A stretch of DNA of 64,000 nt from Podarcis pityusensis (taxonomy: Eukaryota). Positions 54,850 through 63,940 of this stretch are shown one piece after another. How positions within the stretch are numbered: the stretch's first letter is position 1; the number at the start of each line of letters is the position of its first letter. The position numbers and the translations under genes were made by a program. The notes beneath the pieces are model-generated. The model did no database searches. It was not told the origin of the DNA and was given only the letters and a program-made list of their open reading frames with translations. The DNA is taken from the NCBI GenBank assembly GCA_964106645.2, contig OZ067053.1; one strand, given 5' to 3'.

Positions 54850-55360
54850 CCCGCCCCCTCCTCCTTCCCGGCTCACAACACGCCCTATTTCCTCGCGGCT
54901 TTCCCTTTAAGCTGCCTCCCCTGACGCAATGCAGGTGAGGCTAAGCCAATGGGACGTCGGGCGGCGGCGCACGTGACTGCGGAGGGGGCGGGCCCGGGGG
55001 TTATTTAAAGGGCCGCCTTTCCTATTGCTGCGGCCGCGGTTGCCGGGGGCTCGCCGGAGGGAGGGGAATGCGCGTGCGCGCGGGGCCCGGGAAGTAACGT
55101 TCGGCGCTTGCCGTTAGAGCAGAGGAAGAAGAAGAGGAGGAAGAGGGCGAGCGAGAGCGCTTGCGCGAGCGGGGCAACGGCGACGACTCAGCCCCGGGTG
55201 GAGGGAGACGGACGCCAGCCAGGAGCCGAGAGGTCGCAGCGCCGCTTCCCCTCCCCCACGTCACCATGGTGAGCGAGGGGGGGCTTAAATGGGGAGGGGG
55301 CGAAGCGTGAGGTCATGTGAGGAGGGGGGTCTCGACCTCCCCACCCCCCGCAGTGTGGCG
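54850..55360 (+). promoter_or_regulatory. Calmodulin CpG-island promoter and exon 1
   Basis: TGACGCAAT 54922-54930, CCAAT 54946-54950, E-box CACGTGAC 54970-54977, GC box, TATTTAAA 55002-55009; ATG|gtgagc at 55266-55274. Confidence 0.85.
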
Positions 55361-61300: not shown

Positions 61301-63940
61301 GTGCACTGTAAATTTGTAGAGAGGAATGGAGAAAGGGTCTCTTCAAGGAGGAAAACGTCTTTACAGAGGAATAAAAGTGGAAGGAGAGAGAAAATAACTG
61401 GGTTAGAAGCTGTGTAGCTTGTTTGGAAGTATTGTTCCATGGTCCACAGCGGAAAGGATCAGTGTCTGAAGTGTGGGGGTTAAGAACATAGGAAGAGCCT
61501 TTCTGTTGGATCAGGTCAAAGGTCCTCCTGTTCCAGCATCCTCTTCTTACAGTAGCCAGCAAGAAGGACCACCGCACAGCCACATTCTCTCCTTGCATAA
61601 ATAGTCACATGCATCTGTGCTTCTTCTTGATGTTTCTTTCAAAGTGCATTAATTTGCTTTATGGTGAGGATGGACAAGCCAGCTGTGGATGGAGTAATAG
61701 CTTATTATGGGTGTCGACATCCTCTGCCTCTCTCCCTTTCCTGGTTCCACACACAGGATGGCAACGGCTACATCAGTGCTGCAGAGCTGCGTCATGTCAT
61801 GACCAACTTAGGCGAAAAGCTGACAGATGAAGAAGTTGACGAAATGATCCGGGAAGCTGACATAGATGGGGATGGACAAGTCAATTATGAAGGTGAGGAG
61901 GGGAGTTGGATGCGGTGGCACGAGTGGCACCACAGAGCCGCCATCCTCTTGGGCAAGTCTTTGTTTCAATGGGTCTTGCTCAGGAATTATGACCCACATA
62001 ATTTTCAGAGATTTGTTTAGAAAGATGGATGCCAAAAACTTGTGTAGATCTTTAATAAAGCCCCAAGAACCTCATTTTTTCCTAAAGTGATGGTTTTGAC
62101 CTAAAAGCCTTACATGGCTCTGGATCTCAATACCTTAAGGACTGCCTCTCCCCATGCAAACCAACCTGGACCCTGCACTTGTCACCTGGGGCCCTTTTCC
62201 AAATCCCCTTCCCCGAGACCTTCAGAAAGTGACAACACAAGAACGGGCCTTTTCTGTGGTGGCTCCCCGCCGGTGGAATGCTCTCCCCAGAGAGGCTTGC
62301 CTGGCGCCGTCATTACATATCTTTAGGTGCCAGGTGAAAACATTCCTCTTTACCCAGGCCATCATCCATTAAATAATTTATGACCTGTTAAATGTGGGAG
62401 GATTGTTACTATGGTTATTTTATTATTAAGCTGTAATGTTATGTTACGTTACGTTACGTGTGTTGTGTTGTGTTTTATATGTTATGTTATGTTATGTTAC
62501 GTTACGTTACGTTACGTTACGTTACGTTACGTTACGTTACGTTACGTTACGTTACGCCCCAGGGTTTCTGGATAAAGGGCAGTATATAAATAGAAATAAT
62601 AATAATGGATAATAATAATGATGATGAAAGGGCAGACTCTGGCCCTGGGACAAATAGTGCCCTGGGCGAGAAGAGCCGCCTTTGTGCCCCTCCCCTATGG
62701 TCAGTTTTGCAGGGCTGCTCACAGGGCTTATGGGACTTAGGCAGGTGTGGTTTGCCCGTGCTACAAAGACTGATGCATGTGTGTATGAAGTCGGGGGCCA
62801 TATGAAACAATTGTTGCATCCCATGACTACATGGGAGAATCCTTGCTCGCAACACCTCCTTGCCCTGGGATCAAATCGCCCGAGAGATGTGCTTCAGTTT
62901 GTGGGGATAATGGAAAAGGGTTTGGCTTGTGCTTCTCCAGAGAACCTCCTCCAAATTCCAAACCCCTTCCGGTGGAGCTTCTTTCTGCTTCCTGGAGCTA
63001 CATCTCTTCTGGTTGTGGTTTGCTGCTGGCCTCCTCTCCGCTGCTCTCGCAGGAAAGCCTTGTGGAGGTTTAGGCCTCTATTCTTCATCATGTTCAGCAC
63101 ACACAATGGCTGGGGCTGCAAGTCCCCCTCCCTGAGCTCCATCACTCTCTCCGCAGCTACCAGAAGTAGGCCATTTGTTGGAATGAGGTAACCAGGCCGG
63201 CAAAATCCCCCGGGCCCAGAGTAAGAGTAGAATGGTCTCTAATCTCATTATTGAGTATTTCATTGTGAATATGAGGGTCGGATTCACGATGAGTGCAGTA
63301 GCCCAAAAGGAATCTTCAAACGGGAGATCTGTACTTTTGTTGACCCTGCTCATGTATCAGCTGAAGAGTGACTTGAGCAGCTGGAATTTTGCAGGAGTCC
63401 ATGGGGATACTTGTACATCCTTTACAAGCTACCAGAAGAGGCACTTACTGCCCACTGTATGGATCTACACAGAGTGCTCACTGATGGCAACCACTCCAAC
63501 ATCAATGGTGCAGATATTTGTGCTAAGCTGGGTCATCTTTGTCAAATTCTCTCTCCTGGGAGAGATGCCTTGCAAGTTCATCCATAGTACCAAAATGACT
63601 GATGTCTTCCCAAACATCTGAGTAGCACTATGAAGTCTCCTGACACTACTTGCTTTCATTCCGTGCCAAAGTTGTTAAAGCTTTTAGGGCAAAATCACAA
63701 AAAGCCGTTTTTGAGCACTGCCATGGACTGCCATACATCTGGATATGCCTTGGAAAATCCAGACCTATGGCAACCCTAGGTAAGCACTTAAAAGAATACA
63801 TCCATTATTTTTATCTTTTAAAATTCATTGGTAGGAGGATATGTTTGGAAAGGTACCTGCCTCTGGAATGTCCTGATTTACTTCCCTTTCTTCTCTCCTT
63901 TGCTCCTCTAGAGTTTGTACAGATGATGACTGCCAAATAA
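55266..63940 (+). CDS. CALM: Calmodulin, 6 exons, 149 aa; paralog identity unresolved
   Basis: Exons 55266-55268 (ATG), 57956-57986, 58658-58801, 60048-60154, 61757-61892, 63912-63940 (3/31/144/107/136/29 nt); translation is the canonical vertebrate Ca[27 protein letters not shown]...[10 protein letters not shown]. Confidence 0.97.
57741..57870. other. Assembly gap (130 N) in calmodulin intron 1
   Basis: Run of n. Confidence 1.
57956..57986 (+). CDS. CALM: Calmodulin exon 2
   Basis: [10 protein letters not shown]. Confidence 0.96.
58658..58801 (+). CDS. CALM: Calmodulin exon 3
   Basis: [23 protein letters not shown]...NEVDAD. Confidence 0.97.
59020..59373 (+). mobile_element. Sauria SINE, full length
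   Basis: 13-bp TSD TAACTTGCCCTAG at 59003-59015 and 59374-59386; ACCTTT tail. Confidence 0.92.
60048..60154 (+). CDS. CALM: Calmodulin exon 4
   Basis: [36 protein letters not shown]. Confidence 0.97.
61243..61307. mobile_element. Penelope-like element terminal fragment
   Basis: GCACCTTAGAGGCCAACTAAGTTTG...GAGCTTTCGTG resembles recalled reptile Penelope ends. Confidence 0.45.
61757..61892 (+). CDS. CALM: Calmodulin exon 5
   Basis: [45 protein letters not shown]. Confidence 0.97.
62100..62600 (+). mobile_element. L2-type LINE 3' end with (GTTAC)n expansion
   Basis: [15 protein letters not shown]...[10 protein letters not shown] motif; microsatellite 62437-62555. Confidence 0.75.
63912..63940 (+). 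CDS. CALM: Calmodulin exon 6
   Basis: EFVQMMTAK* (TAA). Confidence 0.97.

What the first reader, a model, noticed from the sequence alone, without database searches (positions are those of the whole stretch)
55266..63940. Intact calmodulin gene beside SLC3A2: candidate fourth vertebrate calmodulin ohnolog lost in mammals
Seen: a six-exon gene with CpG promoter, canonical 3/31/144/107/136/29-nt exons and a protein identical to CaM, about 3 kb after the SLC3A2 stop. It has introns, so it is not a retrocopy. Known: human CALM1, CALM2 and CALM3 lie at 14q32, 2p21 and 19q13; NXF1, TMEM223 and SLC3A2 lie at 11q12.3, which has no CALM gene. These four regions form a whole-genome-duplication paralogon (EML1-4), and SLC3A1 shares 2p21 with CALM2. 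Inference: this is the missing fourth copy, retained under strong purifying selection.
Basis: partly seen in the sequence, partly recalled or inferred. Interest (0 to 1): 0.8.

Follow-up and report, generated by a model that had tools for sequence, protein, structure and literature searches.

The report
Reptile calmodulin gene beside SLC3A2
A wall-lizard genome carries an intact extra calmodulin gene just after SLC3A2; the same gene sits in the same place in another lizard and a turtle, so it is old and conserved and may be a fourth vertebrate calmodulin copy that mammals lost, though that last step is not yet proven.

Summary
A six-exon calmodulin (CaM) gene lies on the + strand at 55266-63940. 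Its coding exons are 3/31/144/107/136/29 nt and it has a CpG-island promoter. The translated exons are identical to vertebrate CaM. It starts 3,059 nt after the SLC3A2 stop. The N gap lies inside intron 1, 85 nt before exon 2, and touches no codon.

The window is from a Podarcis lizard. The order NXF1-TMEM223-SLC3A2-CaM recurs gap-free in the cordylid Hemicordylus. SLC3A2-CaM also recurs in the turtle Pelodiscus, with the same exon sizes, an identical protein, a shared promoter block and near-saturated synonymous sites. So the gene is neither a misassembly, nor a retrocopy, nor a recent duplicate. It dates at least to the common ancestor of lizards and turtles.

Alligator and budgerigar lack it at that slot. 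No CaM exon lies within 10 kb of SLC3A2 in a frog or a ray.

The "fourth ohnolog" reading remains likely (about 0.55) but unproven. I could not count CaM loci in this genome or obtain CALM1/2/3 comparators. RefSeq-type annotations already call the 149-residue product in other reptiles. No paper in the searched library describes it.

The parts
54800..55265 (+). CpG-island promoter and 5'UTR of the CaM gene. Block 54899-55013 is conserved in Hemicordylus and Pelodiscus.
   Evidence: GC 0.65-0.68 and CpG o/e 0.8-1.28. blastn 87.7% over 57 nt to L004 28794-28850 and 73% over 116 nt to L007 19676-19781.
55266..55268 (+). Exon 1 coding part: the ATG only, followed by the donor gtgagc.
   Evidence: Hemicordylus has the same ATG|gtgag; Pelodiscus has ATG|gcaag.
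57741..57870 (.). Assembly gap (130 N) inside intron 1. It is not coding.
   Evidence: I did not fill it or look it up.
57956..57986 (+). Exon 2, 31 nt ([10 protein letters not shown] plus the first base of E).
58658..58801 (+). Exon 3, 144 nt (CaM residues 12-60; EF-hand 1 and the first half of EF-hand 2).
60048..60154 (+). Exon 4, 107 nt (the rest of EF-hand 2, the central helix, and the start of EF-hand 3).
61757..61892 (+). Exon 5, 136 nt (EF-hands 3 and 4).
63912..63940 (+). Exon 6 coding part, 29 nt, ending in TAA. The 3'UTR runs off the window end at 64000.
40384..52207 (+). SLC3A2 (4F2hc). This is the upstream neighbour on the same strand.
   Evidence: SLC3A2_N Pfam hit, E=5e-35. Exon translations and a C-terminal amylase-type domain. 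99% identity to Podarcis raffonei SLC3A2.
23647..24174 (+). First coding exon of a TMEM223-family gene.
   Evidence: PF06979 hit, E=1e-16. The same gene lies between NXF1 and SLC3A2 in Hemicordylus.
17249..17755 (+). ORF holding the start of the NXF1 C-terminal TAP_C domain.
   Evidence: PF03943 hit. NXF1 is annotated at the same relative place in Hemicordylus.

Best explanation
This is a functional, bona fide calmodulin gene. It is an additional transcription unit, with its own CpG-island promoter, that produces the same 149-residue calcium sensor as the other CALM genes.

It sits tail-to-head after SLC3A2 in a Podarcis lizard. Orthologous copies occupy the same slot in a cordylid lizard and a softshell turtle. 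So it existed in the common ancestor of lizards and turtles, roughly 280 million years ago by my recollection of published time-trees.

The most likely origin is the fourth product of the two early vertebrate genome duplications. On this reading it was kept in the SLC3A2 (human 11q12.3-like) member of the CALM paralogon in reptiles, lost in mammals, and lost or moved in archosaurs.

Shown here: gene anatomy, protein identity, purifying selection, and orthology and age within sauropsids.
Inferred: the 2R origin, coexistence with CALM1-3 orthologues, and expression.
For: - Anatomy and protein identity.
- Same gene order NXF1-TMEM223-SLC3A2-CaM (149-aa product) in Hemicordylus capensis.
- SLC3A2-CaM in Pelodiscus sinensis.
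- Identical exon sizes in all three species. Splice sites are GT-AG throughout, except a GC donor on turtle exon 1. Protein is identical, with pS 0.58-0.67.
- A conserved promoter block in all three, and collinear 3'UTR patches with poly(A) signals about 535 nt after the stop in the two outgroup loci.
- The window's genus is established from SLC3A2 (99% to P. raffonei, 67% to Hemicordylus), so the two lizards are deeply diverged.
- The standard view is three CALM genes on human chromosomes 14, 2 and 19 (PMC13663517; reference B62 in PMC3927394).
- From established map knowledge (memory, not tested here): 11q12-13 is the fourth partner of 2p21/14q/19q13 (EML1-4, LTBP1-4, FOS family, MAP4K1/2/3/5). 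A landing there by chance is unlikely.
- The two-kinase RSK/MSK-type gene beside alligator SLC3A2 and the FAM161-family gene beside turtle SLC3A2 recall RPS6KA5 and FAM161A/B near CALM1 and CALM2. The human positions are from memory.
Against: - No CaM exon lies within 10 kb of SLC3A2 in alligator, budgerigar, the ray Narcine or the frog Spea. So nothing yet places the gene before the lizard-turtle ancestor.
- The number of CaM loci in this genome and the presence of a separate CALM3 orthologue were not determined.
- No CALM1/2/3 nucleotide comparators were available, and synonymous sites are close to saturation anyway.
- The paralogon argument rests on remembered human map positions.
Confidence: 0.55

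Rival explanations
1. It is the sauropsid orthologue of mammalian CALM3 (or of CALM1 or CALM2), lying at a different chromosomal place because of a rearrangement in one lineage. Reptiles would then have three CaM genes, not four.
For: The number of CaM loci was never counted here. The gene sits in a GC-rich, CpG-island context (GC3 0.61-0.87), as I recall for CALM3. The neighbourhood of SLC3A2 is clearly rearrangement-prone: the upstream neighbour is TMEM223 in lizards, a FAM161-family gene in the turtle, and SART1 in archosaurs.
Against: A move from one member of a paralogon exactly into another member would be a coincidence. A separate compact GC-rich CaM gene exists in birds beside an LRR/Ig/FN3 gene. 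This shows that sauropsids can hold CaM genes beyond the classic CALM1 and CALM2, although its identity is unknown.
Confidence: 0.2
2. It is a DNA-level (segmental) duplicate of one of CALM1-3 that was inserted next to SLC3A2 in a stem sauropsid or stem amniote. It would be old, but much younger than the vertebrate genome duplications.
For: The adjacency is so far seen only in lizards and a turtle. It is absent at that slot in frog, ray and archosaurs. A DNA-level duplication keeps introns.
Against: It would have to land by chance in the one paralogon member that lacks a CALM gene. The gene has its own conserved promoter block and 3'UTR patches. No trace of a duplicated flank was seen.
Confidence: 0.2
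3. It is an assembly artefact: exons 2-6 were wrongly scaffolded after an unrelated CpG island and ATG across the N gap, or a collapsed or misplaced CALM copy.
For: The gap at 57741-57870 separates exon 1 from exons 2-6.
Against: Two independent gap-free assemblies of other species show the same promoter block, ATG-only exon 1, intron 1 and exons 2-6 directly after SLC3A2. A genome-sized contig set holds 90% of the sampled words of 57871-64000.
Confidence: 0.02

Closest known systems
Vertebrate CALM1, CALM2 and CALM3 (the 'multigene, one protein' calmodulin family)
   Same: Same 149-residue protein. Same six-exon layout, with an ATG-only first coding exon and coding exons of 31/144/107/136/29 nt. 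CpG-island promoter. Extreme purifying selection with free synonymous change.
   Different: It lies beside SLC3A2 in the NXF1/TMEM223 block, which in human (11q12.3) holds no CALM gene. So far it is found at this slot only in lizards and a turtle. Its orthology to any of the three is not established.
Compact GC-rich calmodulin gene of birds (partial models P0114 Balaeniceps rex and P0070 Anhinga rufa; loci L001 and L002)
   Same: Identical protein over exons 3-6, the same exon sizes, and high GC3.
   Different: Its introns are 70-90 nt rather than 0.7-2 kb. Its neighbour is an LRR/Ig/FN3 (DUF4808, LRFN-like) gene, not SLC3A2. It shares no flank similarity with the lizard or turtle genes. Budgerigar and alligator SLC3A2 have no CaM beside them.
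Processed calmodulin pseudogenes and retrocopies (for example the human CALM1-related pseudogenes cited in PMC13663517)
   Same: They are extra CaM-like sequence outside the three classic loci.
   Different: This gene has five introns at the canonical positions, its own promoter, an intact frame, and orthologues across deep reptile splits.

Membership tests
Bona fide calmodulin gene (CALM family) | Encodes the invariant 149-residue vertebrate CaM with four EF-hands | tested here: met
   Exon-wise translations. Exons 3 and 5 are 100% identical to CaM residues 13-59 and 96-140 in solved structures. The split codons were read directly from the sequence. I did not search the joined spliced protein as one sequence, by instruction.
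Bona fide calmodulin gene (CALM family) | Canonical exon-intron structure (ATG-only exon 1, then 31/144/107/136/29-nt coding exons) with consensus splice sites | tested here: met
   Exon sizes are identical in Hemicordylus, Pelodiscus and the two birds.
Bona fide calmodulin gene (CALM family) | Transcribed and spliced | not testable with these tools
Transcriptome-sized contig sets hold 17-29% of the sampled words, but intronic repeats could explain that. NCBI-type annotation calls a 149-residue product at this slot in two other reptiles.
Fourth 2R ohnolog of CALM1/2/3 | Lies in the fourth paralogous region, syntenic with human 11q12-13 genes | tested here: met
   NXF1, TMEM223 and SLC3A2 lie directly upstream. 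The human map positions and the four-way paralogy are from established knowledge and were not tested here.
Fourth 2R ohnolog of CALM1/2/3 | Coexists in one genome with separate CALM1, CALM2 and CALM3 orthologues | not tested
   I had no access to the whole assembly. Context look-ups were exhausted (12 of 12), and I obtained no id for the canonical CaM entry.
Fourth 2R ohnolog of CALM1/2/3 | Present in lineages that split before amniotes (amphibians, lobe-finned, ray-finned and cartilaginous fishes) | tested here: inconclusive
   No CaM exon lies within 10 kb of SLC3A2 in Spea (frog) or Narcine (ray). The sturgeon contig ends 2.8 kb after SLC3A2, and no DNA was returned for Lithobates. Only the adjacent slot was examined, so the gene could lie elsewhere in the block.
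Fourth 2R ohnolog of CALM1/2/3 | Branches outside the CALM1, CALM2 and CALM3 clades in a gene tree | not testable with these tools
   No CALM1/2/3 nucleotide sequences were in hand. pS is already 0.58-0.67 within sauropsids, so coding sites are near saturation.
Retrocopy / processed pseudogene | Intronless, no own promoter, usually decayed | tested here: not met
   Five introns, a CpG-island promoter and an intact frame.

The most novel reading that the evidence does not exclude
Jawed vertebrates began with four calmodulin genes. The fourth, in the SLC3A2/NXF1 block, has survived with an unchanged protein in lizards and turtles. It was lost in mammals and lost or displaced in archosaurs. On this reading the 'three genes, one protein' rule is a mammalian reduction of an ancestral quartet.
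Probability: 0.5. Interest if true: 0.55.

Novelty: new member of a known kind. Interest (0 to 1): 0.42.

Why it matters
Calmodulin is the textbook case of several genes encoding one identical protein. The field, including work on calmodulin-linked heart disease, reasons from three genes.

A fourth, equally constrained locus in reptiles would show that the ancestral set was larger and that mammals lost one. It would also give a natural system for asking what each redundant copy is kept for: dosage, tissue or mRNA-localisation control. And it would add a clean marker to the 2p/14q/19q/11q paralogon.

The practical value is modest. The protein is unchanged, and annotation pipelines already call the gene in other reptiles.

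Tried and rejected
1. Word search with the stop-free stretch around exon 3. Thousands of tied CaM hits came back. The canonical 149-residue entry was not among the 120 listed, so I could not look up CaM loci directly.
2. Context look-ups with isoform X2 proteins. They failed because only the longest product is indexed. I repeated them with X1.
3. Lithobates look-up.
4. Sturgeon look-up. The contig ends 2.8 kb after SLC3A2, so it is uninformative.
5. tblastx and tblastn of the stretch after the lizard and turtle CaM genes against the alligator kinase gene and the bird LRR/FN3 gene. Only low-complexity noise came back, so the downstream neighbour of the reptile gene remains unknown.
6. 3'UTR and 5' flank comparison with the compact bird CaM gene. 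There was no similarity, so I can claim no orthology.
7. Third-position identity as an orthology signal. I rejected it because GC3 ranges from 0.61 to 0.93 and drives the values.
8. Read laying on 57900-62400. This gives no evidence either way on expression or on paralogue number.
9. Literature searches for a fourth vertebrate CaM gene, for CaM-SLC3A2 linkage, or for the paralogon. Nothing relevant was found.
10. Scan notes. There is no other calmodulin note in this genome.
11. I did not search with the joined spliced protein, by instruction.
12. I saw or used no contig that I would take for human.
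Full report
**1. The observation**

On the + strand I read an ATG at 55266-55268 followed by gtgagc. The coding exons after it are 57956-57986 (31 nt), 58658-58801 (144), 60048-60154 (107), 61757-61892 (136) and 63912-63940 (29, ending in TAA). Every intron is bounded by GT..AG.

Translated exon by exon, by reference, the pieces read as the consecutive segments of vertebrate calmodulin. The three split codons complete as E, G and E. Exons 3 and 5 are 100% identical to residues 13-59 and 96-140 of calmodulin chains in the Protein Data Bank.

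That step is left out.

The 600 nt around the ATG form a CpG island, with GC 0.65-0.68 and CpG observed/expected up to 1.28.

**2. The gap**

The only N run in the window is 57741-57870. It lies inside intron 1, 2,472 nt after the exon-1 donor and 85 nt before the exon-2 acceptor. No codon and no reading frame crosses it.

What does depend on the scaffold join is that the ATG-only exon 1 belongs with exons 2-6. Gap-free assemblies of two other reptiles show exactly this order. In the other lizard intron 1 is 2,481 nt, against 2,687 nt here including the estimated gap.

**3. Surroundings**

All of the following lie on the + strand:
- an NXF1 C-terminal TAP_C piece in ORF 17249-17755;
- a LINE reverse-transcriptase ORF at 20588-21406;
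- a TMEM223-family ORF at 23647-24174;
- SLC3A2, from exon 1 at 40384-40839 (SLC3A2_N, E=5e-35) to a last exon ending "...LLLSFPYVA" with its stop at 52205-52207.

The CaM ATG is 3,059 nt after that stop.

**4. Which genome**

The window's SLC3A2 exon translations are 99% identical to Podarcis raffonei, 96% to Zootoca and Lacerta, and about 67-75% to other squamate families. The window is therefore from a Podarcis wall lizard (Lacertidae).

**5. Is the linkage conserved?**

The CaM protein is invariant, and my word search returned only a crowd of tied hits. So I went through the fast-evolving single-copy neighbour instead.

One profile-free search with SLC3A2 exon 1 and one word search with a full-length lizard SLC3A2 gave named orthologues. 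I used the big search because the word search cannot reach full-length SLC3A2 from a single exon, and because the claim turns on presence or absence in other lineages.

Context look-ups and my own tblastn of the fetched DNA gave these results:

| Species | Gene order around SLC3A2 | CaM beside SLC3A2? |
|---|---|---|
| Hemicordylus capensis (cordylid lizard) | NXF1, TMEM223, SLC3A2, then a 149-residue gene 1,611 nt downstream | Yes; exons 2-6 found, protein 100% identical |
| Pelodiscus sinensis (softshell turtle) | FAM161-family gene (-), SLC3A2, then a 149-residue gene 1,811 nt downstream | Yes; exons 2-6 found, protein 100% identical |
| Alligator | SART1 (-), SLC3A2, then 1.7 kb on a two-kinase-domain RSK/MSK-type gene (-) | No CaM exon |
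| Budgerigar | SART1 (-), SLC3A2, TRMT112-like, BANF1, MUS81 | No CaM exon |
| Narcine (ray) | SLC3A2, then COX8 | No CaM exon |
| Spea (frog) | Nothing called within 10 kb | No CaM exon |
| Sturgeon | Contig ends 2.8 kb after SLC3A2 | Uninformative |
| Lithobates (frog) | No DNA returned | Uninformative |

**6. Are the reptile loci orthologous?**

The three reptile genes share identical exon sizes and an identical protein.
- Synonymous sites differ at 58-67% (JC dS 1.1-1.7), which is close to saturation.
- The one "non-synonymous" step per pair that the Nei-Gojobori path method reports is a path artefact. The translations are identical.
- A promoter-proximal block (window 54899-55013) is conserved in both other species (88% over 57 nt; 73% over 116 nt).
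- Hemicordylus and Pelodiscus share collinear 3'UTR patches, and both have a poly(A) signal about 535 nt after the stop.

These are one orthologous locus, not independent insertions.

Lacertids and cordylids are deeply split squamates, and turtles are on the archosaur side of the sauropsid tree. So the gene was already beside SLC3A2 in the common ancestor of living sauropsids, roughly 280 Myr ago. That date is from published time-trees as I remember them and was not computed here.

Alligator and budgerigar share the derived SART1-SLC3A2 junction. I therefore infer a rearrangement in stem archosaurs that removed or moved the CaM gene.

**7. What this excludes**

- A retrocopy is excluded by the introns, the promoter and the conserved orthologues.
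- A recent lineage-specific duplicate is excluded by the shared locus in a turtle.
- A misassembly is excluded by two independent gap-free assemblies.

**8. What remains open**

The third refuter remains open: only three intron-containing loci, with this one being a relocated CALM1, CALM2 or CALM3.
- I could not scan the whole assembly.
- I got no id for the canonical CaM entry.
- I used all twelve context look-ups.
- I therefore have no CALM1/2/3 nucleotide comparators, and coding sites would be near saturation in any case.

The argument for a 2R origin is positional. The gene lies among orthologues of human 11q12.3 genes. From established map knowledge (remembered, not tested here), 11q12-13 is the fourth partner of the 2p21, 14q and 19q13 regions that hold CALM2, CALM1 and CALM3 (EML1-4, LTBP1-4, FOS family, MAP4K1/2/3/5).

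Two small observations fit this. The gene beside alligator SLC3A2 is an RSK/MSK-type kinase, and the gene beside turtle SLC3A2 is a FAM161-family member. Their human paralogues RPS6KA5 and FAM161A/B lie on the CALM1 and CALM2 chromosome arms (again from memory).

A relocated or segmentally duplicated copy would have to land in that region by chance. Against this, nothing yet places the gene before the sauropsid ancestor. The frog and the ray lack it next to SLC3A2, although I examined only 10 kb.

My weights are:
- 0.55 for a fourth 2R ohnolog;
- 0.20 for the CALM3 (or CALM1/2) orthologue in a different place;
- 0.20 for an old DNA-level duplicate;
- 0.02 for an artefact.

**9. Birds**

Two partial bird models (P0114 and P0070) come from a compact GC-rich CaM gene with introns of 70-90 nt and GC3 of 0.89-0.93. 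In Balaeniceps it is followed by an LRR/Ig/FN3 gene whose last exon resembles DUF4808/FN3 (LRFN-like) clusters.

It shares no flank similarity with the lizard and turtle gene. It may be the displaced orthologue or a CALM3-type gene. I cannot tell which.

One paper notes that a finch calmodulin paralogue could not be assigned to calm1-3 (PMC3927394). That is only an anecdote.

**10. Expression**

The look-up of sequencing runs listed 18 transcriptome-sized contig sets from several studies holding 17-29% of the sampled words. It also listed genome-sized sets holding up to 90%. The exons make up only about 8% of the stretch, so intronic repeats or pre-mRNA must contribute. This is not proof of expression.

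The searches that used exon 3 were made before it. Later scripts worked beside those places.

**11. Prior knowledge**

Reviews state three CALM genes on human chromosomes 14, 2 and 19 (PMC13663517; reference B62 in PMC3927394). One teleost study remarks that the family was already diverse before the tetrapod-teleost split (PMC2702319).

No paper in the searched library mentions a fourth vertebrate CaM gene, or a CaM-SLC3A2 linkage.

However, public annotations already call the 149-residue product at this slot in Hemicordylus and Pelodiscus. So the gene itself is not hidden. Only its evolutionary reading seems undescribed.

The scan's own notes hold no other calmodulin finding in this genome.

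**12. Verdict**

This is a real, old and strongly constrained calmodulin gene. It is a new member of a known kind, and moderately interesting. The fourth-ohnolog claim is plausible and readily testable, but it is not established here.

Noticed in passing
L007:1-3726 (-), Pelodiscus sinensis: A FAM161-family gene (549-residue product, PF10595) lies directly upstream of turtle SLC3A2. As I recall, mammals have only FAM161A (2p15) and FAM161B (14q24). This may be another paralogue retained in the same block and lost in mammals.
   Followed up: no
L003 and L005 (alligator, budgerigar): Both archosaurs have SART1 (-) directly upstream of SLC3A2, where lizards have NXF1 and TMEM223. This looks like a shared derived rearrangement that coincides with the absence of the CaM gene at that slot. 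Downstream the two differ: an RSK/MSK-type kinase in alligator, and TRMT112-like, BANF1 and MUS81 in budgerigar.
   Followed up: partly
L001:415-1614 and L002:1293-2357 (Balaeniceps, Anhinga): A compact GC-rich bird calmodulin gene with introns of 70-90 nt and GC3 about 0.9. In Balaeniceps an LRR/Ig/FN3 (DUF4808, LRFN-like) gene follows on the minus strand, 8.3 kb after the stop. Its orthology to CALM3 or to the SLC3A2-linked gene is unresolved.
   Followed up: partly
L007:19929-19933: The turtle CaM exon 1 is followed by GC rather than GT (ATG|gcaag). This is a GC-AG intron where the two lizards have GT.
   Followed up: no
window 59020-59370 and 62150-62380: tRNA-derived SINE-like repeats lie in introns 3 and 5 of the CaM gene. 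These may explain why transcriptome-sized runs hold more of the stretch's words than the exons account for.
   Followed up: no
window 62430-62560: A (GTTAC)n/(GTTAT)n pentanucleotide microsatellite of about 130 nt lies in intron 5.
   Followed up: no
window 20588-22618: A LINE remnant lies between NXF1 and TMEM223 in an AT-rich, G-skewed stretch. It has a reverse-transcriptase ORF (RVT_1, E=1e-25), followed by a 355-residue ORF with no Pfam hit.
   Followed up: no
CaM coding exons: window, L004, L007: GC3 of the same orthologous gene ranges from 0.61 (Podarcis) and 0.62 (Pelodiscus) to 0.87 (Hemicordylus). Local base composition has drifted strongly while the protein stayed fixed.
   Followed up: partly
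Proteins P0130 and P0408 (Lithobates pipiens): Two different SLC3A2 entries ('SLC3A2' and 'SLC3A2-like') sit on the same 240-Mb frog chromosome record. This hints at a frog-lineage duplicate of SLC3A2.
   Followed up: no
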